64,000 nucleotides of DNA from positions 23,374,001-23,438,000 of the forward strand of contig NW_027266264.1 in NCBI RefSeq assembly GCF_022045235.1, in the 5' to 3' direction. This document shows, one piece after another, positions 13,451-62,828 of this stretch; the stretch's first letter is position 1, and the number at the start of each line of letters is the position of its first letter. The translations under genes were made by a program, and so were the position numbers. This DNA comes from Haliotis cracherodii. Lineage: Eukaryota. Below the pieces are notes generated by a model. The model was not told where the DNA came from. It made no database searches and saw nothing but the letters and a program-made list of their open reading frames with translations.

Positions 13451-13805
13451 GTTTTGACGTCTGTCAAGTAGATATTTTAGTCTTTCAAATACATACGTCT
13501 GATCTGATGAGATGGCAGTGTGAGCAAGGCATATTTCATCAGAACCATGTAAGATATACGAGCCAATCTCCTTCTCTATGGTGCATAGTGTGAACTTCCA
13601 ATTCTCTTGGCTGGGACAAGATGGAATTGATATTACCAACATAACCCGGTCTCTCCCTTCCTTCTAGATGCAGTTTAGCCTGTTTGGTGACATTTTAATC
13701 CACATCTTCTTTGAAGCGTAAACGAAATTTTACTTATAGTGTATGTGTCTTTATTCAGCTAATGCACCGGAAATATATTACTGGTTTGTTCAAAAGAATT
13801 AAATG

Positions 13806-14087
13806 GGTGAGTGAGTGAGTTGGGTTTTAACGCTGCTTTTAACATTATTCCAGTCATATCACGGCGTGTCAGCTTAATGTGGGAGGAAAGCCCCAAGTGA
13901 TGCAGGTCTCAGACGGTTACCACTTCGGTGAAACCCACGAGCACAGGTATGGTGCTGACAAACCTAGAAACATAATCGGGTCGAACCGGGATTCGAACCC
14001 ACAATCATAGGTTTCTGGCGTGCCAAAGGGACGCAACACTGCACAGCGAATCGCGGCGCCTTAGACGACTGGGCCACCCCTGCCCTC
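13806..14087 (-). mobile_element. SINE family C (tRNA-Leu-like head, (ACTC)n tail), full length
   Basis: A box TGGCCCAGTCGTCTAAGGCG, B box GGTTCGAATCC; 15-bp TSD CAAAAGAATTAAATG at 13791-13805 and 14088-14102. Confidence 0.92.
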
Positions 14088-14850
14088 CAAAAGAATTAAA
14101 TGTATGAAACCTTTATAACATTGTAACCGGGTTTTGTGATGGCAAATACAAGGTCCAACACAGGCTACGGGTGTGAGTCTTTATTGCCTTAGTAGATAAC
14201 AATGACACCCTGTAATGTACAAACAATTAGATTATAAAAACAGTACTACACAGGTTTCATACACACATATATTAATACAATACAAAGCGACCTTTCATTT
14301 AATATAAACATAGTCTATATTCATTACATCAACATGAACTTAATAATCAATGATATATAAAATCATTATCTTACCCTGAAGTAAACAAACGATTTATCAA
14401 GGGCGATAACTCGATCCCGACATTACTGATAAGATTACAATATATAGATGGTCCACGGTCCTAACATACAATGAACATTACAAATACAATTACCACTTTG
14501 TTGAAACTACTATTAATTCATTACCTGATCATACATTTGGTATGATACACTATTTACAAGATATATTTCATGACACAACAAACATGTAAATTGTGCGTAC
14601 CCTGTGGGTGACACTGGGGTGTTTGTCCTCTCCAGGCAGCCGCCGTGCATGGATGCTAAGAAGCTGTCAACACGCTCCTAATTACAGAATCAAATATGAA
14701 TAAATGTAACACACAGAATACAATTGAGGAAATAAAACTAAATCCAACTATCAAACAATGATTGACATTGCATACAAATTCAGTATTTACACAATGATAA
14801 AAATCAACGCATTCATTCAAACATTCACACACAGAAGGAAGAAAAGCATT

Positions 14851-14855
<5 letters not shown>
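13920..14855 (+). repeat. Left copy of the ~1-kb direct duplication flanking the LINE
   Basis: Near-identical to 20375-21391 apart from a 79-bp and a 2-bp deletion and a few substitutions. Confidence 0.95.
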
Positions 14856-14884
<29 letters not shown>

Positions 14885-15025
14885 CTTTATTTCCTCCAGA
14901 AATTAATCCAAAGATTATACATAATTAATCAAACGTATTCACACAAGCTCATATTACCTGTACATATATACAATAAAAGACAGTAGCACCAGTGTCATGC
15001 CATTCACACAGTACAAAAGGTTAGA

Positions 15026-18000
15026 TCAGATGACATAATCAAGGTAAGGCTTTAGTGTAAGTACATAAGCAGAAAATATCAATATAACAGATTCCCATGT
15101 AACTATATCAATACATTGTGAGAAGTGAGTATCAGCACCAAAGAAAAATGACAACATATCTTCTTCATCTTGTAATTCCAACTGGACATAGGTTTCAACA
15201 TCAAGCAGATCAATAAAGGTTGAAAACAGTTCATTTCTTTCCTGCAGTAGAGCTTCACAATGTAATATGATGTGATCATCATAATCAAAGGCATGTTTGT
15301 TACACAATAAACAGTCCCTGGAAGTTTTGTTACGTGATGAAACTCTAACACAAAATGTTAAACTTGACCTCTGTTCTGGGTACTGATATGCTAGTTGCCA
15401 TAATATATGGTGAGTAAGCTTTGTGTGTATTAGCATGAAGCGTGAAAGACCTGTATTGACAGAAACTTTTCTGCGCCACATATTTTCTTCATATTCATGA
15501 ATGGTTTTATTAACCAGCTGCTTCCAGTTTCTCTTTGTAGGAAATACACCACAGCTTATATATGTACAAAGGTTGTTTCGTAGGTTATACTTGTTAAGAA
15601 CTGATAATAAATCTCCACATATAGATTTAGGATTAGTTGGATTTGCAATGTATGCGCAAAAAAGATGTTTAACAAGACTGTTACAGGTTACGTTACATAA
15701 GCGGCCAAGCAGCTGAAGTTTACAGTTATCGATATAGCCGATCATTGTCCACAGCCCAAGATTAGCAATAGTGGATTCTGATGGAGATCTTTTATCAAGT
15801 CCTTGTATAGTTCGCGCGAAATAGCGTTGAGTATTTTCAATGACATTAATGTTTTGACCCTTAATATCAAAGAGCAGTTCGCAGCCGTAAAAACTTGTTT
15901 TTAATATCATTCTTAACCAGATTTTTACACTGGTAGCTGGATGTAGCTCAGAACTGTTGAGTCCCACAGATTTTAACGAATTAATACTTTGTCTTGCTTT
16001 TTGGCAACATTTTTCAATACTTGATTTACATGACAGGTTATGCGTTAGTAGTATGCCACCATACATGACAGAGTCAGATGTTGTTATTTTTATATCACCA
16101 AGTTTGCAATTAATATCTAACCCCTTTTGTTTTGTCTTAGAGAAGACAACAACATTACCTTTTGAAGGGTTATACGTTAGTCGCCACTTTGAGGCATATG
16201 AATGTACTGTATCAAGTGCGTTTTGAAGCCCTCGTGGCGATGTGCTCACAAGAGTTGTGTCGTCTGCAAGCAAAACAGTTGGAATATCTAGACCAAATAC
16301 ACAAATACCACTATTTGCTTGTCTAAGGGCTGTTATAAGGTCATTAATGAAGACTAAGAAGAACCAAGCAGAGAGAACTCTTCCTTGTCCGACACCTTGT
16401 CTTACATGGTATATATCTGACTGTTCACCCTGATAAGTAACGAAAGCATGGCTATTTGTATAGCTATGGTGTAATAACTTCCATGTATTTCCTCTGATAC
16501 CCATTTGGTGTAATTTATAAAAAAGGCCGTCCTGCCATATTCTGTCGAAAGCCTTTTCATTGTCTAAGAAAGCAGCATATACTGTAGAATCTCGATGTAA
16601 GTAAAATTGAATACTTTCAATTAGGGTGAAAACAGACATTATTGCCCCATGTTCTTTCCTAAAGCCGAACTGGAGCATGTCGGGGAAGTCAGGATTTGAC
16701 TTTATCATTTTTAGTTCAATGCGCTTAACAATAAGTTTTTCAAACAGCTTTCCAATGCATGAAGTTAAGGTTATACCTCTATAGTTTCGGGGATCCGATT
16801 TGTCATTCTTACCCTTGTATATAGGAATGACCATTCCTAGTCTATAATTAAAAGGAATGTATTGTAGTCTTAACATAGCATTAAACAGGGCACACAGATA
16901 TCTTATCAAAGATTCACCCCCGTGAATTATATGCTCGTTTGTAACTTTATCAGGCCCAGGGGACTTGTTTCTACTCAGTGTTTTAACAGTTTCATTTACT
17001 TCTACAGTGGAAAATTGTCTTTCTAGTTCCTCATCATGTGCCCCTATCTCTTCGTGAATACGTTCTAGGGAAGAAGATATATCTTTTCGAAAATTTTCAT
17101 CAAAAGTGTCTGAGCAATATGGCTGAGCTAGATCAGAGTAATATTTTCCCCACAATCTACAAATGTCCGAGGGTGTTGTGACACTCTCTCCCTCATAGTT
17201 GAGTTTTGTTATATCTGTAGTTTTTGACCTTTGCTTTCTTACAGTTTTGTAAAAGGAATGTATATCAAGTTCAGATGATTTTTCTATTTCTGTAAGGACT
17301 TGCTTCCTTTTACCTTTTTTGGATTTGCGATAAAGGCGTCTAAAACACCTTTTTTCATTTTTGTAAGATATACGTTCGTTTGAATCTTTATCTCTCGATC
17401 TACCATTTTGAATCCAAGTTCTTCGAGCCACCCTCATGCGATAGTGTGCGTTATCAAGACCATCTTGTCTCCAAAATGGTTTAAGAAAGGGCTTAAACAC
17501 ACTTTGTGGGATACATTTGTTAGCTGCATGTATAAGAGTTTCATTTATGATGTCACATTGGATTTCTAAACTTTGTGGATCTAAGGAGTGGGGATTTGGA
17601 TTGCCATCATATGCACATTTAATATATCTATCAACTTCTGCTTGAAACATAGAAATATTAGTCTTATTTGCTTTATCCCACTTAGGGATAACTCGCTTTA
17701 TATTTTGATCGTGGCTAGTTAGCCCTTCTTGTGATATAGAAATATGACAAGGAAAGTGATCAGATATTTCATAAGGACAGCTTGCTATAATGTAACAGTC
17801 TGTAATGAAGTTACGTAGCCATGACGGTACAAGAATATAGTCTATAAGGCTTCGTGACGTGTTATCTTTTGATCTGCATGTATATCCTAGTCCTCCGAAT
17901 TGTACCATATTTACTGCATGTAATAGATGTCTATTTTCTATAACGTTTCTAAGTAGCTTATCCCGTGCTGTTAGATTGGCCTTACAAACATCAGCATTTA

Positions 18001-18562
18001 AATCATCCAAGATAAAAACTGTTCCTAACTCACACAGATTATCATATATGTCCATCAGTTCATCAAGGGCATTACAGTATACAGAGTTTAACACATTTGT
18101 AGATGGTAGTCGACTGGCTATTACATATACATCACAGTAGCCTGTTTGTGACAATTTAACACTTATTGCATAATCCGAGCTTATAGCTATTGGAATAGCT
18201 TTCCACTTGGTGTGGGTATTAGTTAAGATAGCTAACCCATCTGACCCTCGTGCACAACTCGCATTTGGGGGTAATGCTCTGTATGTGATTAAATTTAGGT
18301 TTTGAAATGATCTTAAACAGTCTACTTTATCAGACGATAGCCAGTGCTCTTGTAAGGCAACAAGGTCAACTGGCATTGATAAGGTGTTACAAATATAATC
18401 TGTACCATGGAGGATCCCACGTACATTCCATGTTAATAAGGACAGAGTCATTTGAACAAATGTGGATAGAGACATGAAATTAAGCATTCTGAATATAATA
18501 TCACAACTTCTAATATTTGTACGAGTCAGTCTGGTCATAGCCCATTCTGTTTTTAGGTACAT
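15026..18562 (-). CDS. LINE ORF2: APE endonuclease, reverse transcriptase and C-terminal CCHC zinc knuckle
   Basis: TWNVRG, LQEHW, IDYI, SDHFP; KSPGPD, YRGITL, QFGFR, FLDNEKAFD, GVGQGRVLS, LLADD; CLLC..HIILHC. The true start is probably a downstream Met such as 18451. Confidence 0.95.
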   Translation of the reverse strand: MYLKTEWAMTRLTRTNIRSCDIIFRMLNFMSLSTFVQMTLSLLTWNVRGILHGTDYICNTLSMPVDLVALQEHWLSSDKVDCLRSFQNLNLITYRALPPNASCARGSDGLAILTNTHTKWKAIPIAISSDYAISVKLSQTGYCDVYVIASRLPSTNVLNSVYCNALDELMDIYDNLCELGTVFILDDLNADVCKANLTARDKLLRNVIENRHLLHAVNMVQFGGLGYTCRSKDNTSRSLIDYILVPSWLRNFITDCYIIASCPYEISDHFPCHISISQEGLTSHDQNIKRVIPKWDKANKTNISMFQAEVDRYIKCAYDGNPNPHSLDPQSLEIQCDIINETLIHAANKCIPQSVFKPFLKPFWRQDGLDNAHYRMRVARRTWIQNGRSRDKDSNERISYKNEKRCFRRLYRKSKKGKRKQVLTEIEKSSELDIHSFYKTVRKQRSKTTDITKLNYEGESVTTPSDICRLWGKYYSDLAQPYCSDTFDENFRKDISSSLERIHEEIGAHDEELERQFSTVEVNETVKTLSRNKSPGPDKVTNEHIIHGGESLIRYLCALFNAMLRLQYIPFNYRLGMVIPIYKGKNDKSDPRNYRGITLTSCIGKLFEKLIVKRIELKMIKSNPDFPDMLQFGFRKEHGAIMSVFTLIESIQFYLHRDSTVYAAFLDNEKAFDRIWQDGLFYKLHQMGIRGNTWKLLHHSYTNSHAFVTYQGEQSDIYHVRQGVGQGRVLSAWFFLVFINDLITALRQANSGICVFGLDIPTVLLADDTTLVSTSPRGLQNALDTVHSYASKWRLTYNPSKGNVVVFSKTKQKGLDINCKLGDIKITTSDSVMYGGILLTHNLSCKSSIEKCCQKARQSINSLKSVGLNSSELHPATSVKIWLRMILKTSFYGCELLFDIKGQNINVIENTQRYFARTIQGLDKRSPSESTIANLGLWTMIGYIDNCKLQLLGRLCNVTCNSLVKHLFCAYIANPTNPKSICGDLLSVLNKYNLRNNLCTYISCGVFPTKRNWKQLVNKTIHEYEENMWRRKVSVNTGLSRFMLIHTKLTHHILWQLAYQYPEQRSSLTFCVRVSSRNKTSRDCLLCNKHAFDYDDHIILHCEALLQERNELFSTFIDLLDVETYVQLELQDEEDMLSFFFGADTHFSQCIDIVTWESVILIFSAYVLTLKPYLDYVI

Positions 18563-20120
18563 AGTCTCTACTTCTGATGTCAGGGGGCCAAAAATCTGAC
18601 TTACCAGCTATGTTATTTTCATAGTCATCAACGTCCATGTTAACTTGCACAGTATACGTATCCTGATGGTTATAGTTCATTTTCTTCTTCATGAGTCGCA
18701 CAAATGTCACGCGAACATGTTTGTCCTGGGCACAGTTGTATATCAGATCTTTCACAGTCTCAAAAGGTTCATCTGCTCTAATGTTATACAGCACAATCCG
18801 TTTGGTCCGCATTCTTGGTACACCTTCAAGAGTTCGATAGGTTTTAGCTAAGGATTTAATAGGATAAGATTCATATCCAGCTTGTTTACTTCCAGATTCA
18901 CGTGCATCATTGTCTTTGCTTCGTTGTCTTCGTCTCACAGAGTTCCAAGAATCATTATCACTGTGTTCACCATTATAAGTAAAGTCGTACAGATAGGTTT
19001 TGTTGGTAAGATCAAGGCAGTTGTCACCTTTATCTGACAATGTTGATATTCCAGGATTTGATGATATATAAACTTCATTTGTCTGCTGTCTATTTTCTGT
19101 AGGTATCATATGGGCGTCTTTATTTGGTTTGTCATTATTTACTTTTTGTTGGGCACCTGCATTAGGATCCGGTAAAGTTTCTCTGGTTCTTGGTCCAGGT
19201 TCAGCTTGCATTTCAATTGGTTGGACTTCATTTATTGTGGAAATGGTTCCATTTGATTTAGGTCTATTAGGGGTATGTGAAGTATTCAGTTTAGACGCCA
19301 TATTGCTGACCTTCGTTTCTATGAACTTTAGTTTAGTATCAATTGAGTAGTTCATGCGTAATGCTTCGCTTTCCAGTTCATGGATATGGTCCCGGAAGCA
19401 TTTGTTTTCCTGGCCACTAATTTTAAGTTCAGCTCTGAGTTCAGCTCGTCGATTTTCTGATTCATTTAGTCTATCTTTTAACTCATTCACTTGTACTTCC
19501 TTCTCGTAGATAGTTTTTTTCAATGTCAAAACTTCATCTTCGAATTTCTTCTCCAGTTTCTTAATCCTGTTGTCTATTGCATCATTCCCCTGGTTAAAAC
19601 ACTGTTTAAGTTGGATCACATGACTTAAAATCAAGGGTAACGAGTCACTTTCACTGTGTGTGATGTTCTCCTCCACTGCGTTGTCGTCTCCGTCGTCTCC
19701 TCCATGGCTGTCTTCGTCACCGAGAATCGAATGGTTACCAACAGATTTGATACTTGCCCGGCTGAGCACTTTCGTCTGTAAAACGTGATCTGGTATTCCT
19801 CCCTCCACATATTGGAATATATAATACACATCTTGAGCGTATTTGTTGAGAATAGATTGCTTGTTGTTGTTTTTATATCGTCGTGATACAAGTCTTCCAG
19901 CAGGAAATTCGTCACAAGTAGCCTTAGCATAGTCATACACACTTTCACGAATGTGGTTAAGTTCCTTGGGGTCACTTTTGTAGATACCAATCAGGCCTTG
20001 TTGAAAAGAGTCTTTGTCTTTGTGTCCAAGCTTGAGCTTGAGTTCGTCATATATCGCTTTGTCCTGGCTGTCGCTGGGTTGAGTATTATACAACACATCC
20101 TCCTCTCCCCTGTCACTCAT
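18510..20120 (-). CDS. LINE ORF1: coiled coil and C-terminal RRM-like domain
   Basis: 536-aa open frame upstream of ORF2; heptad-rich segment; RIVLYNI...FWPPDIRSRDY C-terminus typical of LINE ORF1. Confidence 0.88.
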   Translation of the reverse strand: MSDRGEEDVLYNTQPSDSQDKAIYDELKLKLGHKDKDSFQQGLIGIYKSDPKELNHIRESVYDYAKATCDEFPAGRLVSRRYKNNNKQSILNKYAQDVYYIFQYVEGGIPDHVLQTKVLSRASIKSVGNHSILGDEDSHGGDDGDDNAVEENITHSESDSLPLILSHVIQLKQCFNQGNDAIDNRIKKLEKKFEDEVLTLKKTIYEKEVQVNELKDRLNESENRRAELRAELKISGQENKCFRDHIHELESEALRMNYSIDTKLKFIETKVSNMASKLNTSHTPNRPKSNGTISTINEVQPIEMQAEPGPRTRETLPDPNAGAQQKVNNDKPNKDAHMIPTENRQQTNEVYISSNPGISTLSDKGDNCLDLTNKTYLYDFTYNGEHSDNDSWNSVRRRQRSKDNDARESGSKQAGYESYPIKSLAKTYRTLEGVPRMRTKRIVLYNIRADEPFETVKDLIYNCAQDKHVRVTFVRLMKKKMNYNHQDTYTVQVNMDVDDYENNIAGKSDFWPPDIRSRDYVPKNRMGYDQTDSYKY

Positions 20121-20374
20121 TGTTGTTCAATCAAGATAAAAGCCTAGGTACACTAGCTAGGTCTTGTCAGGTTTACACTCTATACAGTTTGTGTGAAGGG
20201 TTTGGGTTTTAAGATTTGTAATGTCATGTTTTCAACAAAAGGCTTCAAATAATGATAGAAAATCTTCTTACAAACTCAATGTTTGTTTTGAGGTTTTTCT
20301 ACATTTCTATAAAGTGTGTTAAAACTCACTTTTTGTAGGAGCGATGTCACAGGCCATCCACACTTTAGCGCATG

Positions 20375-21391
20375 CCACTTCGGTGAAACCCACGAGCACA
20401 GGTATGGTGCTGACAAACCTAGAAACATAATCGGGTCGAACCGGGATTCGAACCCACAATCATAGGTTTCTGGCGTGCCAAAGGGACGCAACACTGCACA
20501 GCGAATCGCGGCGCCTTAGACGACTGGGCCACCCCTGCCCTCCAAAAGAATTAAATGTATGTTTGGTGGTACAAATAAACAAACACATATACACACACAG
20601 AAAAAGGTTAAGCACCCCCTGTATATTCTACAGGGCATTGAAACCTTTATAACATTGTAACCGGGTTTTGTGATGGCAAATACAAGGTCCAACACAGGCT
20701 ACGGGTGTGAGTCTTTATTGCCTTAGTAGATAACAATGACACCCTGTAATGTACAAACAATTAGATTATAAAAACAGTAGTACACAGGTTTCATACACAC
20801 ATATATTAATACAATACAAAGCGACCTTTCATTTAATATAAACATAGTCTATATTCATTACATCAACATGAACTTAATAATCAATGATATATAAAATCAT
20901 TATCTTACCCTGAAGTAAACAAACGATTTATCAAGGGCGATAACTCGATCCCGACATTACTGATAAGATTACAATATATAGATGGTCCACGGTTCTAACA
21001 TACAATGAACATTACAAATACAATTACCACTTTGTTGAAACTACTATATTAATTCATTACCTGATCATACATTTGGTATGATACACTATTTACAAGATAT
21101 ATTTCATGACACAACAAACATGTAAATTGTGCGTACCCTGTGGGTGACACTGGGGTGTTTGTCCTCTCCAGGCAGCCGCCGTGCGTGGATGCTAAGAAGC
21201 TGTCAACACGCTCCTAATTACAGAATCAAATATGAATAAATGTAACACACAGAATACAATTGAGGAAATAAAACTAAATCCAACTATCAAACAATGATTG
21301 ACATTGCATACAAATTCAGTATTTACACAATGATAAAAATCAACGCATTCATTCAAACATTCACACACAGAAGGAAGAAAAGCATTTATAG
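20375..21391 (+). repeat. Right copy of the ~1-kb direct duplication (starts inside SINE C)
   Basis: Begins CCACTTCGGTG (=13920), ends GCATTTATAG (=14855). Confidence 0.95.
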
Positions 21392-22039
21392 TGTTTACTT
21401 AGCCTTATTTTATTATTAACTTAGTAATATGGTGACACAATCACCATACCAAAGATAAGCATGTTAATAATACTGAAACAACATTCCACATAACTTGGAT
21501 AACATAAGTTATATTATCATTTAAATACATACATAGAGATTAGCTAGCAATTTTATAGATTACTAACCTTAATAATCGAATTATTTATCCCAGATCTGTC
21601 CATGTCCAAATTGTTGACTGACTTCTGAATTGGTGTATTGTCAAGTGCAAGATGGATGAAAAGTGCACAGTTTGAACAAGCCAATGAAAACAAGGCTTGG
21701 GTTAGAACAAAGAGGAGAAACAATGACACAAACATAGACCAACCCAACCACCCTCTACATTATAAGTAAACTCATCCAGAAGCCCATAATAGATATTGAA
21801 CTAAGAACCTACTTTCCTAACAACTTAAAATAATATTACAAACCTAAAGGACCTCAAATAGATAAAACATATGTACAACAAAACTGTATGTTAATACTTG
21901 TGTCTGCCACAACATAACCTCGGAAAAAAACGAATATGGTTTGCAATACCTCTGACAATAAGAAAACATAAAACGTTTATCCTGTTTTGCGATTTTTATC
22001 ATGATTCTAACAAAAACTCAGAGATGATTCAAACACTTA

Positions 22040-22960
22040 GTTACATCCTGCCTTCCTCTGTGGAAGCGATCATTTCCCCACCATTCTTAAAGCAATCTTC
22101 ATCTAGATGACAGTTTAACATGGCCATTTGGTCAATGTATGAACTATTAAGAACTGCAAACTTAACCCCTGAACAAATAAATAAAATGAAGATCCGATTC
22201 AGTTGTTTTCAGATCCGTTCAATGAAATAACAGATGAAATAATTCCAAAGTCCTCTGCAAATTGTTACATTCGTAAACCATGGTTTAGTAATGAATGCAA
22301 AAAGGTACCAAAGTGTAGGAAGAAAGCGGTAATGTATTTCTGCCGCCATCAAAATCTTCTGTTCATCATCTTAAAGAAGGTGATAAATTATTAACTGATA
22401 AAAGTGACATCCCCCGTAAACTTGGTCAAACACTTGCCAAACATTCTTCAGCACCAAGGGGTGATTATAAACGAACAAACAAACAAAACAAAACTAAATT
22501 AAAATCAAATCAATCCAAACCAGCGTATGATTGCGTTTTAATCCTCCTTTTGGGGAATTATTCCAAACTAAACCGAAGCTGGTTCCACCTCTGGTGATCA
22601 GAATAAAACCAGATATAACAGTAGCAAATTTGGATCTTGATATTATTGCAACATACCGACTAATGTCTACACCTCATTGGTAATTAGTCAATTGGTAATT
22701 AGAAACAGACCTTACACTAACTAATTATTAATAATCTGCTACAAACCAGCTATTCTTTCAGCACGAATATTAAATTATCCAATATCCAATTAAGATCAAA
22801 ATACGATTCTCACCGATCCATCATCACTGGTGGATCGAAGGATGGTGCCAAAGTAGCCACTGGATTAAAAAATATTTCTTCCAGATTACCAGACATTAGC
22901 TCACTATTTACTGCTGAAGCTAAGGTTAATCAAACAGCCTTGAAATATGTTCAGAAACAG
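22040..22960 (+). mobile_element. Decayed I/Nimb-group LINE fragments (endonuclease end, RNase H)
   Basis: SDHFP, IPKSS...KPWFSNECK, and TGGSKDG..VA...RLPD.SSLFTAEA (LINE RNase H), heavily deleted. Confidence 0.65.
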
Positions 22961-23533
22961 AATCCATGAAAACACTTCATCTTTTTATTAAATCGTGTTT
23001 TGGTATCATCACTTTTTGATAGTGATTCATAAACACATGCTTATGATATCCCCGGAGCCCAACAATAGACTCTGCTTTTAGTAGAGATTTCTTATGATTA
23101 TGGAAATGTCTTTGTCAATTGAATTTCTAGACATGGTCAATCCCCCGGGCACACCAGAAAGCTGTGATCGTGGGTTCGAATCCCGGTTGCCCTGGTATTG
23201 TTTCTAGGTTTGTCAGCACCATACCCGTGCTATTTGGTTTCATATTGTGCCTTTAACCATATGAGCTGAAACAAGAGGAACCATGGACGTTTCAGGACAC
23301 AAGGAAGACACGTGAGAGTTATACTGAAAGGATACCATGACATTGCCGTGTATCAAGCTCAAGCATCACAATGAATTCAATGCATATGCCCAACTCAATT
23401 TGTTGGTTTATATTATTAAGCTCTGAAGCAAGTTGCACGTGAACATGACGATAATATTCATAAAAGTGGATCAAGGATAATATTTCAGATGAATACATTT
23501 CAGAAGAATGAAAGTGATCTTTAACGTAAAACA

Positions 23534-23750
23534 ACTTTCTGACGATGAAGTCGCAATACATTCTCCATCTACATTAAATCTGTGCTGAACCTCCGTAGGA
23601 CGAAAGACTTTCTGACGATGAAGTCGCAATACATTCTCCATCTACATTAAATCTGTGCTGAACCTCCGTAGGACGAAAGACTTTCTGACGATGAAGTCGC
23701 AATACATTCTCCATCTACATTAAATCTGTGCTGAACCTCCGTAGGACGAA
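23534..23750. repeat. Perfect 73-bp tandem triplication
   Basis: Units start at 23534, 23607 and 23680. Confidence 0.97.
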
Positions 23751-55866: not shown

Positions 55867-58565
55867 TGTCATAGCTTGTGTCTGAAGTACATTTGACTCA
55901 AAAGGCAAATTACCCTGTAGCCATGTCTCCATAACTTAATTGTCATTACGTTTTAGGCGCTAATCCCCGTTGTTAATCCTCACCAACATTTCATTGTATA
56001 GTGACTGTCATTCAGCCTGGACTACCATATCACTTCCCTTTAACTACTGCTTTTTATGGTATGGCATTTATTGCCCTAATTGATCATCCCATGAACTGTG
56101 TTGGTTAATCACGCCCATATGTCCAATGTCCAAAGCAATGTCATTGTCTCTTTGTCTGTCCATTGTTGTTCATTACTATATATGTGCTACCATTTCACTT
56201 TTACTTGGGTGTTAGTCAGGCTTGGTATTCCGAGTGCTGGCATCGGGACATCCTCGAGCAATTTCTTAGGAAACGCCCTGAGGTGAGCTGGAGCTCCACT
56301 CACCTCTTGTACGCCTGAGCTGGAAGGTCCGCTCATCGATGTGTTTGTGTTGTCAGAGCAGGTATTCCGCTCATTGTGCAGTTGTTGTTTATTGTTTACA
56401 TGTTGTGCATAAAGCGTTCCGGGACAGTGATGTTGAAGTTCTCCTTTATTCCCCCAAGAGCTAATTCCCCGTCAACATGCGCGTTGACAACTAGTGGAGA
56501 ATCCGGGTAGAGTAACTTTTGAGTTTACTCCCGATCCAGTTACCTCTTATATATGCCTACCATCCTGAAGAACAATCATCAACCCAAGCCCTGAAGAGCA
56601 AACAAACAAGATTGAAGAAAACAACAACAACTTCTCCGATGCCAACTTTCCTGATTAAATTTCCCATTCAGGATTTTGTTCATACACAGGACCAAAGAAG
56701 TATACACGGCTATCCCAAAGCCATCATCATGCAGACCCTGCACAATACAGAAGCCGCCTCACGGGCACCTACAAGATATTTCATTGGGACTTACTAATTT
56801 GTGTCTACTAACATGGACTCAATCAAGGATAAATATTGTGTGACTGTTGAATAGTGCAACCAGATATGTTTGATCAAAGCCAGTATATTAATGCCAAAAC
56901 GTGTCTTTCCAAAATTATTTTTTATATGTGCAATATACTCCAATTCCATGTTTAGTCAAGCTAGATCTTTGAAGTTATTGTGTAGGGAGTCTTGGAAATG
57001 TCTCAAGGCCACGCCAGACATATAGATACAGCTAGGGCCCAGACAAACCTCAGCTGTAGGGTTATCGAGTCACACCTGAAAGTTAGACTTGTAATTTCAA
57101 AAATCTAAACAACCAAATTTGTCATTTGTTACAAGTTTTTAATGTGCACAATTTGATAGAAAATTTAATGTATTGTCTTGGACTTTGAATTCAGATTAGG
57201 GATAATCTTAGGTAAGCCACCCTCACACATGTATATTGTATGTCAGTATTAAGTAATTATCAGCACAGCAGTATTCAGCATTTCAGAGTTTTGATGTCGG
57301 AATTAAGGATTATTATTTTCCTTGGGCATAGCACCCACAACATGGGCAAGCTCGGTAAAAGACACGGGAAGAGCACCCATTGTACTTAAAAGGGCAAACG
57401 TACCCACAAGTATCGCTTGAGTCGCGCGATAAGTTGGACTCCTGGTTTAAAATTTCTTTATGCGAAATAGTTGTTGAGATGTTTAATTCGTACTTTTTAT
57501 GACATTACTCATTAATATTATTTGGTACTGAGTCGCACTGCCAAGCCAGACTCCTGAATTCAAAGAACCTTCGGTGATATATTTATTGAATCTGTGCAAA
57601 GTTGCATTACCTCGTAGTGAAATTGCACATTACAAAGAATACTTGGTTGATGTAACAAATGCTATATTTGTTATATCGTTGTGTGTTCAATACTTGGTTA
57701 GTTTTCAAACTGGCACTAAATCAAACTGGCTAGATGATCACTTTCATACCGTCATTGGATAGGTACATGTGCACACGTATTTCAACAATATCCTGAACTC
57801 ATCTAACTGATTATGTTAACATTTTGCACTGTTGTTTTTGTTGGTAAAAACGTGTCACACATATCAATTTGGACTCATGAAAGCTTGGGGTCCAAGCTTC
57901 ACGGAACAGAGGGAAGTTGTCATAGAGACTGATTTATGACTACCATTGTCTGAAGTACATTTGACTCCAAAGGCAAATTACCCTGTAGCCATGTTTCCAT
58001 AACTTAATTGTCATTACGTTTTAGGCGCTAATCCCCGTTGTTAATCCTCACCAACATTTCATTGTATATTGACTGTCAGTCAGCCTGGACTACCATATCA
58101 CTTCCCTTTAACTACTTCTTTTTATAGTATGGCATTTATTGCCCTAATTGATCATCCCATGAACTGTGTTGGTTAATCACGTCCATATCTCCAGTGTCCA
58201 AAGCAATGTCATTGTGTCTTTGTCTGTCCATTGTTGTTCATTACTATATATTTGCTACCATTACACAGTTAATTGGGTGTTAGTCAGGCTTGGTATTCCG
58301 AGTGCTGGCATAGGGACGACCTCGAGCAGGATGTGCCGCTCGTAGGAAACGCCCTGAGGTGAGCTGGAGCTCCACTCACCTCTTGTACGCCTGAGCTGGA
58401 AGGTCCGCTCTTCGCTGTGTTTGTGTTGTCAGAACAGGTATTCCGCTCATTGTGCAGTTGTTGTTTATTTTTTACATGTTGTGCATAAAGCGTTCCGGGA
58501 CAGTGATGTCGAGGTTCTCCTTTATTCCCCCAAGAGCTAGTTCCCCGTCAACATGCGCGTTGACA
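55867..58565 (+). mobile_element. Complete non-autonomous LTR retrotransposon (TRIM/LARD-like)
   Basis: LTRs 55867-56489 and 57918-58565 (TGTCA...TGACA), 4-bp TSD CTTG, tRNA-Ala-like PBS TAGTGGAGAATCCGGGTA (~56492), PPT GGAACAGAGGGAAG (57903-57916), no gag/pol ORF inside. Confidence 0.92.
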
Positions 58566-60621: not shown

Positions 60622-60759
60622 CTACAGGACCGTACAGACTCTGGACTTGTTCCGTCTCTCAAGTTCCAGCATCTGCTTCTGTAGGGTCTGCAGCTCATTG
60701 GTCTTCTCCATCAGCTTCACCATTACTTCCTCCCGACCCTCCTGAGACTTCTCCAGTTT
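60622..60759 (-). CDS. Terminal coding exon of an unidentified coiled-coil protein ending in a CaaX box (CTVL*)
   Basis: Acceptor ATTTCCTCTCCAG|; KLEKSQEGREEVMVKLMEKTNELQTLQKQMLELERRNKSRVCTVL*; candidate AATAAA at 60483-60478 and 58647-58642; no upstream exons identified in the window. Confidence 0.72.
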   Translation of the reverse strand, partial: KLEKSQEGREEVMVKLMEKTNELQTLQKQMLELERRNKSRVCTVL

Positions 60760-60779
60760 CTGGAGAGGAAATACAGACA

Positions 60780-61926
60780 ATGAACACAACAGAACATTTC
60801 TGGGCAGTATGGCCAGACTGGGGAGGAACACATAGATGAACACAGCAGAACCTTTCTGGCATATATAGGGACAGTCTGGGGTGGAACACAGATAGATGAA
60901 CACAGCAGAACCTTTCTGGCATATATAGGGACAGTCTGATGTGGAACACAGATAGATGAACACAGCAGAACCTTTCTGGCATATATAGGGACAGTCTGGG
61001 GTGGAACACAGATAGATGAACACAGCAGAACCTTTCTGGCATATATAGGGACAGTCTGGGGTGGAACACAGATAGATGAACACAGCAGAACCTTTCTGGC
61101 ATATATAGGGACAGTCTGGGGTGGAACACAGATAGATGAACACAACAGAACATTTCTGGGCAGTATGGCCAGACTGGGGAGGAACACATAGATGAACACA
61201 GCAGAACCTTTCTGGCATATATAGGGACAGTCTGGGGTGGAACACAGATAGATGAACACAGCAGAACCTTTCTGGCATATATAGGGACAGTCTGATGTGG
61301 AACACAGATAGATGAACACAGCAGAACCTTTCTGGCATATATAGGGACAGTCTGGGGTGGAACACAGATAGATGAACACAGCAGAACCTTTCTGGCATAT
61401 ATAGGGACAGTCTGGGGTGGAACACAGATAGATGAACACAGCAGAACCTTTCTGGCATATATAGGGACAGTCTGGGGTGGAACACAGATAGATGAACACA
61501 GCAGAACCTTTCTGGCATATATAGGGACAGTCTGGGGTGGAACACAGATAGATGAACACAGCAGAACCTTTCTGGCATATATAGGGACAGTCTGGGGTGG
61601 AACACAGATAGATGAACACAGCAGAACCTTTCTGGCATATATAGGGACAGTCTGGGGTGGAACGCAGATAGATGAACACAGCAGAACCTTTCTGGCATAT
61701 ATAGGGACAGTCTGGGGTGGAACACAGATAGATGAACACAGCAGAACCTTTTTGGCATATATAGGGACAGTCTGGGGTGGAACGCAGATAGATGAACACA
61801 GCAGAACCTTTCTGGCATATATAGGGACAGTTTGGGGTGGAACACAGATAGATGAACACAGCAGAACCTTTCTGGCATATATAGGGACAGTTTGGGGTGG
61901 AACACAGATAGATGAACACAGCAGAA
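60780..61926. repeat. 60-bp minisatellite with shorter variant units (intronic); remnants at 62829-62870 and ~63120-63150
   Basis: GATGAACACAGCAGAACCTTTCTGGCATATATAGGGACAGTCTGGGGTGGAACACAGATA x~17 plus 2 variants. Confidence 0.98.
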
Positions 61927-62828
61927 TAGGGCTTCCAAGGGTCCAAATTTTTGGACTCGAGTACCCGAGGGGTGAAACTCGACTTGTACTTGAGTACCCG
62001 AAAATAGGACATTCTTTAAGAATATTGGTTCATTAGATCAAAATTGCCATCTAAAAGTATTAAAACATGTAATAAGTATAATTGAAATGTAAATAGAGAG
62101 GGTCCACGGAACTTTTTTATCTGTCAATGTGTATGGAAGCGTTCAGAGTTAATGTTTGCTTGTAACTGCACTAATCTTAATCACGACCTTCAAAAACATT
62201 ACGTCATGTCTACAAATGCTACAATACATATTGAACACAAACCAAGTTTTTTTCTGACGATCAGCGTTTCATTCGACACCTGCCAACAAGCACGAACAAT
62301 AATTCTCAGGAAGAAAATCGATAATGTGAATCACGTGACATACACGTATACACAGCTGCTGGGCTGCAAGACTAAGGCCGCGAAATATGGAAATGTAGTA
62401 CTATAAGTTCATTCATTAATGAGTTTTGTCACGTTTTCAAACTGTACCAAACTGTCGGCCTGTCGCTTGATTTGTAAGCACATATATATCAGCTAATCAG
62501 TTGTTAATCTGTGTAAGCGAATACACTTGGCATTTGAGTCCCGAGCAAAGAAGCAATAATCGCCTTGATACATTCAATTTCTTAAAGTCGTAAAGGAAAA
62601 CAATAATTACATCTAATTTATGTGACATTCTCAATTGTTCTAATGTACATCTACTTTCTACAAAGAATACATTATTCAAACAATATTTTTTGAAGCTTTA
62701 ATCAATATATTGATGAACAATTGAACATTGAAACAGAGTGATCTCCCCTTATCGAGTCCTTGATAACGGACTCGAGTCCCAGTAAAACCGACCCGGCCCC
62801 GAGTACTCGAGTACTCGTTGAAGCCCTA
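61927..62828. mobile_element. Non-autonomous hAT-type DNA transposon
   Basis: TIR TAGGGCTTC/GAAGCCCTA, 8-bp TSD CAGCAGAA (61919-61926 and 62829-62836), subterminal ACTCGAGT palindromes. Confidence 0.92.

What the first reader, a model, noticed from the sequence alone, without database searches (positions are those of the whole stretch)
13920..21391. Intact LINE flanked by a ~1-kb target-site duplication
Seen: 13920-14855 and 20375-21391 are direct repeats that abut the LINE's (TC)n tail and its 5' end exactly. They differ only by a 79-bp indel, a 2-bp indel and about three substitutions. The target ends ...TTTATAG and runs straight into the (AG)n complement of the tail. Known: LINE TSDs are normally a few to tens of bp. 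Inference: TPRT was primed by tail microhomology at the AG, and second-strand cleavage or strand invasion occurred ~1 kb away. That duplicated host DNA and gave a pseudo-LTR structure whose two copies can date the insertion.
Basis: partly seen in the sequence, partly recalled or inferred. Interest (0 to 1): 0.78.

Follow-up and report, generated by a model that had tools for sequence, protein, structure and literature searches.

The report
LINE with a one-kilobase target duplication
A full-length jumping gene (LINE) is flanked by two copies of about 1 kb of the DNA it landed in, and other copies of the same family often carry duplications of 34-413 bp, so this is the extreme of a family habit.

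Summary
13920-14855 and 20375-21391 are direct repeats that differ by 3 substitutions in 936 aligned bases, a 79-bp indel and a 2-bp indel. They abut the (AG)14 tail and the 5' end of a 5,519-bp minus-strand LINE with open ORF1 and ORF2 (APE + RT).

The repeat is not part of the LINE. It consists of part of a tRNA-type SINE, a short spacer, and the first 736 bp of a 1,256-bp solo Ty3/gypsy LTR. That LTR is uninterrupted at the insertion point in 15 of 15 paralogous copies.

I read both flanks of 31 other copies of this LINE family:
- 9 have junction-anchored duplications of 34-413 bp.
- 1 has a 180-bp duplication lying 679 bp beyond the LINE.
- Among 992 mismatched flank pairs used as a control, the longest anchored match was 14 bp.

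A single target-primed insertion with a distant second-strand break is therefore the best reading (0.85).

Two sub-claims are not supported. Priming by AG microhomology does not fit the family nick site, which is AT^. Dating from the two copies is unsafe.

Reads could not confirm the assembly: the public contigs laid on it were too fragmented. Kilobase LINE duplications are already reported (Dualen in Chlamydomonas; L1 in repair-deficient cells), so this is a new member of a known kind. Two unchecked scan notes report similar duplications elsewhere in this genome.

The parts
13806..14088 (-). Complete tRNA-type SINE with its own 14-bp target duplication AAAAGAATTAAATG (13792-13805 and 14089-14102). 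The left boundary of the 1-kb repeat (13920) lies inside it.
   Evidence: Read directly. An inverted, related copy lies at 23141-23242. The depth spike at the homologous stretch shows it is highly repeated. ARAGORN calls no tRNA gene.
13920..14855 (.). R1, the tail-side copy of the duplicated target (936 bp; 934 if the nick is after TTTAT).
14122..14855 (-). The part of R1 that copies the first 734-736 bp (plus-strand numbering) of the solo LTR.
14854..14882 (-). LINE 3' tail, (TC)n on the LINE strand, read as (AG)14.5 on the plus strand.
   Evidence: The same tail is seen in most other copies.
14883..15025 (-). LINE 3' UTR (143 nt).
15026..18562 (-). LINE ORF2, 1178 aa, open. It has an APE-type endonuclease (residues 43-269), a reverse transcriptase (588-811) and a C-terminal CX2CX9HX4C motif.
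   Evidence: Its best solved relatives are L1 ORF2p chains (E 3e-26).
18510..20120 (-). LINE ORF1, 536 aa, open. It overlaps ORF2 by 53 nt and has no significant Pfam family.
20121..20374 (-). LINE 5' UTR (254 nt). Its terminus is shared with three other copies.
20375..21391 (.). R2, the copy of the duplicated target on the LINE 5' side (1017 bp). It is continuous with the rest of the LTR.
20561..20639 (.). 79-bp segment present in R2 and absent from R1 (boundary ambiguous by 1 nt). About 48 bp of it resemble six other genomic places at 87-93%.
   Evidence: A 137-nt contig of run X7 covers 20532-20668 with no difference.
20656..21911 (-). Solo LTR (1,256 bp, TG...CA) of a Ty3/gypsy-type family, flanked by a 4-bp duplication ACAT (20652-20655 and 21912-21915). 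Its sense strand is the window's minus strand.
21385..21396 (+). First-nick site on the plus strand, ...TTTAT^AG^TGTTT. The nick position is ambiguous by 2 nt. On the LINE/LTR sense strand the tail is joined 1-3 nt upstream of CTATAAATG.

Best explanation
One target-primed reverse transcription event put a full-length LINE into a solo gypsy LTR and duplicated about 1 kb of the target. Shown: the structure X-R-[tail...LINE...5' end]-R-Y; that R is target DNA; and that this family often makes long duplications. Inferred mechanism: the element's APE endonuclease nicked the plus strand at ...TTTAT^, which matches the family's AT^ preference, and that 3' end primed cDNA synthesis from the (UC)n tail. 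The break in the other strand was not made next to the first nick. It lay 934-1017 bp away, inside a SINE, at a place that does not look like the element's own nick site, so it was probably a host-made or pre-existing 3' end. That end primed second-strand synthesis on the cDNA. Filling in both single-stranded copies of R then produced the direct repeat. In 5'-truncated copies the cDNA end is joined through 2-10 nt of microhomology. In this full-length copy it is joined with 0-1 nt.
For: The repeat is exact and ends at both LINE termini. The LINE 5' end at 20374 is shared with three other copies, and only 4 places in the genome hold the 5' region at 89% identity or more. R1 starts in the middle of a SINE that continues leftwards with its own 14-bp target duplication. 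R2 runs on into the rest of a 1,256-bp LTR that is uninterrupted across the insertion point in 15 of 15 paralogous loci. R1 and R2 share 21 of 752 alignment columns that none of the 12 other LTR copies aligned shares, so they are copies of each other. Family habit: of 31 other copies read on both sides, 9 carry junction-anchored duplications of 34, 41, 70, 83, 148, 167, 198, 206 and 413 bp, and 1 has a 180-bp duplication 679 bp beyond the LINE end. Among 992 mismatched flank pairs the longest anchored match was 14 bp. The 413-bp duplication is unique DNA found exactly twice in the genome, on either side of its LINE. The nick site fits the family: AT before the tail in 13 of 32 copies against 9.1% background. 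Microhomology of 2 nt or more at the 5' junction occurs in 6 of 10 long-duplication copies. Published precedents: Dualen-4b insertions with duplications of median 900 bp (PMC9977147, passages read); L1 duplications over 100 bp in under 10% of HeLa events and in most events in NER-deficient cells (PMC5223499, passages read).
Against: No read-level confirmation. The four runs laid are short Logan contigs that collapse the LINE copies and are swamped by the SINE, so neither junction nor an empty allele was seen. No orthologous empty site was found; the uninterrupted state is shown only by paralogous LTR copies. 20 of 31 other copies show no duplication of 7 bp or more and 1 shows 8 bp, which is within the control range, so long duplications are a minority outcome and 1 kb is more than twice the next longest (413 bp). 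The two other full-length copies (L034/L019 and L058) show no duplication. The differences between R1 and R2 are odd for simple decay: 2 indels to 3 substitutions, and all 4 polarisable differences lie in R1. The distant-nick step is inferred, not shown.
Confidence: 0.85

Rival explanations
1. Same single insertion, but the duplication was made by repair synthesis and not by a distant nick. After an ordinary short-stagger break, the free 3' end on the Y side invaded the sister chromatid or the homologue, copied about 1 kb of R, and only then annealed to the cDNA end. If the homologue was used, R1 and R2 would be two alleles.
For: The differences between R1 and R2 (a 79-bp indel, a 2-bp indel and 3 substitutions) look more like allelic differences or copying errors than like decay of a very young repeat. 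The 79-bp version exists in an independent individual (X7 contig). The second-break sites lack the element's AT^ signature: 0 of 11 duplications start with AT, read.
Against: In this model R2 is the newly made copy, yet all 4 polarisable changes are in R1 and R2 keeps the LTR family state. No data here separate this from a distant nick.
Confidence: 0.07
2. Unequal recombination between two independent insertions of the same LINE about 1 kb apart in the same orientation, one at 13919|13920 and one at 21391|21392. This would give X-R-LINE-R-Y.
For: It would produce exactly this structure without any short target duplication. It would make R1 and R2 two alleles, which fits the indels.
Against: At most 278 candidate copies were seen in 1.18 Gb, and only 4 places hold the 5' region at 89% or more. 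Two long copies within 1 kb in the same orientation are therefore very unlikely. It cannot explain the 9 anchored duplications around 5'-truncated copies of different lengths, which shows the family makes long duplications directly.
Confidence: 0.04
3. Assembly artefact: two haplotypes or overlapping contig ends were joined, so R is represented twice.
For: R1 and R2 differ by indels as haplotypes would. I could not confirm the join with reads.
Against: A false join would not place a complete LINE, from tail to true 5' end, exactly between the copies. Both novel junctions must exist in real molecules. There are no N runs in the window. Ten analogous structures lie on other contigs.
Confidence: 0.03
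4. R was already tandemly duplicated and the LINE later inserted exactly at the R|R joint.
For: None specific.
Against: It needs both LINE ends to coincide with the joint to the nucleotide, with no target duplication of its own. The family pattern makes it unnecessary.
Confidence: 0.01

Closest known systems
Dualen-4b_cRei insertions in Chlamydomonas mutation-accumulation lines (PMC9977147, passages read)
   Same: The LINE insertions are flanked on both sides by duplicated target DNA of kilobase scale. More than half of the insertions had duplications over 50 bp, with a median of 900 bp.
   Different: Dualen encodes both an RLE and an APE endonuclease, and the authors suggest the pair causes the long duplications. 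Here Pfam finds only APE + RT. The host is an animal. The copies are fixed or segregating genomic copies, not observed de novo events.
Long target-site duplications (L-TSD) of human L1 in cultured cells, extreme in NER-deficient cells (PMC5223499, passages read; L-TSD category in PMC4245944, abstract and passages read)
   Same: An APE-type LINE in which a minority of insertions have duplications over 100 bp. The explanation is a second-strand break far from the first nick. Truncated copies show microhomology at the 5' junction.
   Different: In HeLa, duplications over 100 bp are under 10% of events and the mode is about 15 bp. Here 9-10 of 31 genomic copies have 34 bp or more, and almost none shows the usual 5-20 bp class. 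The tail is (TC)n, not poly(A).
R9 rDNA-specific LINEs of bdelloid rotifers (Gladyshev and Arkhipova 2009; seen only as cited in PMC9977147)
   Same: A LINE family whose insertions carry an unusually long target duplication (126 bp).
   Different: R9 is site-specific with a fixed length. Here the sites are dispersed and the lengths vary from 34 to about 1,000 bp.
LTR retrotransposon or pseudo-LTR (Penelope-like) architecture
   Same: An internal coding region between two long direct repeats, which can recombine to remove the interior.
   Different: The repeats are not part of the element. They start inside a SINE and end inside an LTR of another family, and other copies of the LINE lack them.

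Membership tests
APE-type LINE (non-LTR retrotransposon) | ORF2 with an apurinic-like endonuclease followed by a reverse transcriptase | tested here: met
   Pfam Exo_endo_phos 43-269 (24.9 bits against a cut-off of 24.5, so barely above it) and RVT_1 588-811 (95.5 bits). The motifs WNVRG, LQEH, DLNAD, SDH and ADD are present; their assignment as catalytic motifs is recalled, not tested.
APE-type LINE (non-LTR retrotransposon) | Many 5'-truncated copies that share the 3' end, and few full-length ones | tested here: met
   3' end: 129 candidates, of which the 40 scored are all 95-100% identical. 5' end: 8 matches, only 4 at 89% or more. Truncation points are scattered.
APE-type LINE (non-LTR retrotransposon) | Simple-repeat or poly(A) 3' tail abutting the target, and no terminal repeats of its own | tested here: met
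   An (AG)n tail is present in most of 32 copies. Flanks differ between copies.
Long target-site duplication (L-TSD) insertion | The same sequence lies directly before the tail and directly after the 5' end, and occurs once at the uninterrupted site | tested here: inconclusive
   Both abutments are met to the base. The uninterrupted state is shown only in paralogous LTR copies (15 of 15). No orthologous empty allele was seen.
Long target-site duplication (L-TSD) insertion | The first-nick site fits the element's own endonuclease preference | tested here: met
   ...TTTAT^ fits AT^, which is seen in 13 of 32 copies against 9.1% background, p about 2e-6.
Dualen clade | A restriction-like endonuclease in addition to APE | tested here: inconclusive
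   Pfam reports only APE and RT at E up to 0.01. Only about 95 residues follow the CCHC motif. I do not know whether Pfam has a model for the LINE RLE, so absence is not proven.
CR1/L2-like LINE group (a lean, not a filing) | Placement of the RT in that clade by phylogeny | not tested
   No reference RT set was available. The microsatellite tail, the C-terminal CCHC motif and the lack of a Pfam RNase H hit only suggest it, and the link of these traits to the clade is recalled.
LTR retrotransposon (rejected for the LINE plus repeats) | The terminal repeats belong to the element and recur with it at other loci | tested here: not met
   The 736-bp part recurs only as the LTR of a Ty3/gypsy element (RT-RNase H-integrase) and continues to 21911 there. 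None of the 31 other LINE copies is flanked by it.

The most novel reading that the evidence does not exclude
This LINE family completes integration without a coupled second-strand cut. It takes whatever 3' end is available downstream, for example at a replication fork or a repair nick. This would give a two-class spectrum, with nothing detectable in one class and 34 to about 1,000 bp in the other, in the germline of a repair-proficient animal. The long class makes insertions reversible by recombination. It can also hand the element an upstream promoter: here a complete LTR with its TATAAA and the head of a SINE end up upstream of an intact LINE in the same orientation. The one-sided changes in the tail-side copy (5 of 5 differences, 4 of them polarised) would then be scars of error-prone synthesis running on from the element into the target.
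Probability: 0.15. Interest if true: 0.7.

Novelty: new member of a known kind. Interest (0 to 1): 0.5.

Why it matters
How the second DNA strand is broken and primed is the least understood step of LINE integration. A natural, young family in which about a third of copies record a second break tens to hundreds of bases away, and one records about 1 kb, gives many junctions for studying that step. So far this has been possible mainly in repair-deficient human cells and in one algal element. Long duplications also copy host regulatory DNA. They create repeat pairs that can later delete the insertion, so they bear on how LINEs remodel genomes and on how insertion ages are estimated.

Tried and rejected
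Reads. The one read-laying run (runs X1, X5, X7 and X10 on 18500-22499) returned only short Logan contigs. The SINE part attracts enormous depth. The LINE 5' region is collapsed with its paralogues: every run shows non-window letters at several positions, and depth is 3-5 times that of the unique flank. No listed piece crosses 20374|20375 or 21391|21392. It therefore neither confirms nor refutes the join, and it cannot show an empty allele. The only useful items were an X7 contig (20532-20668, no differences) that carries the 79-bp segment, and an X5 contig that carries the R1-type A at 21185.

Element-borne repeat. I first suspected this because 736 bp of R has over 38 paralogues, some in pairs 7.8-8.3 kb apart. 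I rejected it because those are LTRs of a gypsy element that continue to 21911.

Polarity test. The idea of polarising differences in other long duplications failed, because the 413-bp one is unique DNA with no paralogue.

ORF1. It was not identified by Pfam or the Atlas (best score 0.89, unnamed clusters).

LINE clade. It was not resolved. I ran no further search on it because it would not change the verdict.

TATA targeting. This was suggested by scan notes on other families. In this family the site is AT^ next to the tail, and a TATAAA is adjacent only in the window copy and possibly in the (AT)n sites of two old copies.

Short duplications. Lengths under 7 bp, and target deletions, were not assessed in the 20 copies scored as 'none'.

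Literature. Searches found no report of long LINE duplications in molluscs. They cover only the held open-access library. Supplementary tables of PMC9977147 and PMC5223499, which hold the length lists, were not seen.
Full report
**1. The observation**

The repeat finder gives three collinear blocks at 100% identity. A global alignment gives 936 against 1017 bases, with three substitutions, a 79-bp segment present only in the right copy and a 2-bp TA indel. The bases just outside the two copies are unrelated.

The left copy (R1, 13920-14855) ends ...GCATTTATAG and is followed at once by (AG)14. The right copy (R2, 20375-21391) begins at the base after the end of the element. The window has no N.

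**2. What lies between**

On the minus strand there is a 5,519-bp element:
- a 254-nt leader;
- ORF1 (536 aa, 18510-20120);
- ORF2 (1178 aa, 15026-18562), which overlaps ORF1 by 53 nt and has an APE-type endonuclease and a reverse transcriptase;
- a C-terminal CX2CX9HX4C motif in ORF2;
- a 143-nt trailer and a (TC)n tail.

The best solved relatives of ORF2 are L1 ORF2p chains. In the genome the 3' 400 bp have 129 candidate matches; the 40 that were scored are 95-100% identical. The 5' 400 bp have 8 matches, only 4 of them at 89% or more. This is the usual picture of a LINE family with many 5'-truncated copies. The 5' terminus at 20374 is shared to within 1-6 nt with the three other long copies, so the element here is full length.

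**3. What the repeat is made of**

The repeat is not anonymous host DNA, and it is not part of the LINE.
- R1 starts in the middle of a complete tRNA-type SINE (13806-14088) that has its own 14-bp target duplication. R2 holds only the corresponding 169 bp of that SINE.
- From 14122 (R1) and 20656 (R2) onwards, the repeat is the beginning of an LTR. Used as a query, R2 finds over 38 other places that match from its base 281/282 onward at 82-96% identity, some in pairs 7.8-8.3 kb apart.
- In 15 of 15 loci fetched, the similarity runs without a break from window 20655/6 to 21911, straight across the LINE insertion point 21391|21392.
- The interior of one such pair encodes RT, RNase H and integrase in that order, on the strand that corresponds to the window's minus strand.
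- In the window the LTR is solo: 20656-21911, TG...CA, flanked by ACAT on both sides.
- R1 and R2 share 21 of 752 alignment columns that none of the 12 other LTR copies aligned shares. They are therefore copies of each other, not two members of the LTR family.

The order on the plus strand is X - R - [tail, LINE, 5' end] - R - Y. X|R is continuous within a SINE and R|Y is continuous within an LTR. That is the geometry of a target-site duplication.

**4. The family test**

I read both flanks of 31 other copies.
- Nine have a duplication that starts within 0-3 nt of the LINE's 5' end and ends within 0-22 nt of the tail. Their lengths are 34, 41, 70, 83, 148, 167, 198, 206 and 413 bp, at 92-100% identity.
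- One has a 180-bp duplication that ends at the tail but lies 679 bp beyond the apparent 5' end; SINE-like sequence lies between.
- One shows 8 bp.
- Twenty show nothing of 7 bp or more.
- As a control, the same search on 992 mismatched left/right flank pairs gave 16 anchored matches, all 7-14 bp. The 8-bp case is therefore within noise and the nine long ones are not.

The 413-bp duplication is unique DNA that occurs exactly twice in the genome, on either side of its LINE. The two other full-length copies show no duplication. The roughly 1-kb duplication in the window is thus the extreme of a family habit and not an isolated oddity. This also makes an assembly artefact, or a chance recombination, a poor explanation.

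**5. Junction anatomy**

- *First nick.* Across 32 copies the base before the tail is T in 21 and the last two bases are AT in 13, against an AT frequency of 9.1% in the flanks (p about 2e-6). The window site ...TTTAT^AG fits this.
- *Tail microhomology.* Among the 11 long-duplication cases, the last bases of the 5'-side copy match the tail register in about half. That is what chance gives for a purine (read).
- *Second break.* None of the 11 duplications begins with AT, which would be the mirror of the first-nick preference (read). The second break therefore does not look like a second cut by the same enzyme preference.
- *5' junction.* Six of ten truncated long-duplication copies have 2-10 nt that could come from either the LINE or the target (p about 1e-5). 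The full-length window copy has 0-1 nt. This matches the published split between annealing and direct joining (PMC4245944, abstract and passages read).

**6. Mechanism**

Shown: the structure, the target nature of R, the family spectrum, the nick preference and the microhomology.

Inferred: the plus strand was nicked at AT^ and primed cDNA from the (UC)n tail. The other strand was open about 1 kb away, at a site not chosen by the element, and that 3' end primed second-strand synthesis on the cDNA. Fill-in of the two single-stranded copies of R then produced the repeat.

A variant is that the Y-side end first copied R from a sister chromatid or homologue. I cannot exclude this. It predicts that R2 is the new copy, whereas the changes are in R1.

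**7. Differences between the copies**

Within the LTR part, all four differences (three substitutions and the TA deletion) are changes in R1. R2 has the state of all, or 11 of 12, other LTR copies. The 79-bp segment is also missing from R1. Its polarity is unknown, and about 48 bp of it resemble six other places at 87-93%.

Four of four, or five of five, on one side is not significant (two-sided 0.125 and 0.06). Together with two indels among five differences, however, it argues against reading 0.32% divergence as a clock. The changes may date from the event itself, or they may be allelic.

**8. Reads**

Public runs of four organism labels hold parts of the stretch. I laid contigs of three samples of organism A and one of organism B on 18500-22499. 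The contigs are short, the SINE part is saturated, and the LINE 5' part is collapsed with its paralogues. No listed piece bridges either boundary of R2, and nothing can be said about an empty allele. One X7 contig carries the 79-bp segment with no difference. One X5 contig carries the R1-type A at 21185. The assembly therefore remains unconfirmed at read level.

**9. Comparison with what is known**

- Long duplications are a recognised minority class for L1 (over 20 bp in PMC4245944). Those over 100 bp are under 10% of HeLa events and the majority in NER-deficient cells, where the authors also propose a distant second nick and note that such repeats may recombine and remove the insertion (PMC5223499, passages read).
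- Kilobase duplications were reported for de novo Dualen-4b insertions in Chlamydomonas, with a median of 900 bp, and were tentatively ascribed to that clade's two endonucleases. The same passage names 126 bp in rotifer R9 as the previous record (PMC9977147, passages read).
- The present family has only an APE domain by Pfam, sits in an animal genome that other scan notes call abalone (not verified by me), and shows the long class in roughly a third of genomic copies.
- My four literature searches found no mollusc report. They cover only the held library, and I could not see the supplementary length tables.
- Two unchecked notes of this scan report a 748-bp and a 153-bp LINE-flanking duplication elsewhere in this genome. 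I did not test them or assign them to a family.

**10. Verdict**

The phenomenon is of a known kind, and the family-wide spectrum is the more interesting result.

- Confidence in a single insertion with a long target duplication: 0.85.
- Interest: 0.5.

Noticed in passing
window 21383-21391 (minus-strand sense CTATAAATG) with 20375-21911: The LINE lies in the same orientation as the solo LTR, and its tail is joined 1-3 nt upstream of a TATAAA in the LTR. Because of the long duplication, a complete LTR (with that TATAAA) and then the 169-bp head of the tRNA-type SINE lie upstream of the intact LINE in sense orientation. Whether either drives LINE transcription is unknown.
   Followed up: partly
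window 14246, 14460, 14510/11, 14649 against 20780, 20994, 21045-6, 21185: All four polarisable differences between the two copies are derived in the tail-side copy R1. R2 keeps the LTR family state. The 79-bp segment is also missing from R1. Not significant on its own.
   Followed up: partly
L033/L063 (G000:C80:26271515-26277342): A 5'-truncated copy whose 180-bp duplication lies 679 bp beyond the LINE end. The intervening DNA starts with a SINE-like tail. It could be a later insertion or a co-inserted sequence.
   Followed up: no
L034/L019 (C12) and L058 (C80): The two older full-length copies both sit directly after an (AT)n run and share about 6 extra bases beyond the window copy's 5' end. 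No duplication was found for either.
   Followed up: partly
window 55879-58565: A small LTR-type element: 611-619-bp direct repeats (TG...CA, 94% identical) 2,068 bp apart, with no long ORF between them and a possible 4-bp duplication CTTG.
   Followed up: partly
window 23534-23750: Three perfect tandem copies of a 73-bp unit.
   Followed up: no
window about 1690-2700 and 60720-61975: A long array of a 12-bp unit, and a 60-bp tandem array that is open as ORFs of 429-438 aa on the minus strand.
   Followed up: no
window 23141-23242: An inverted partial copy of the same tRNA-type SINE, 80-85% complementary to the one in R1/R2.
   Followed up: no
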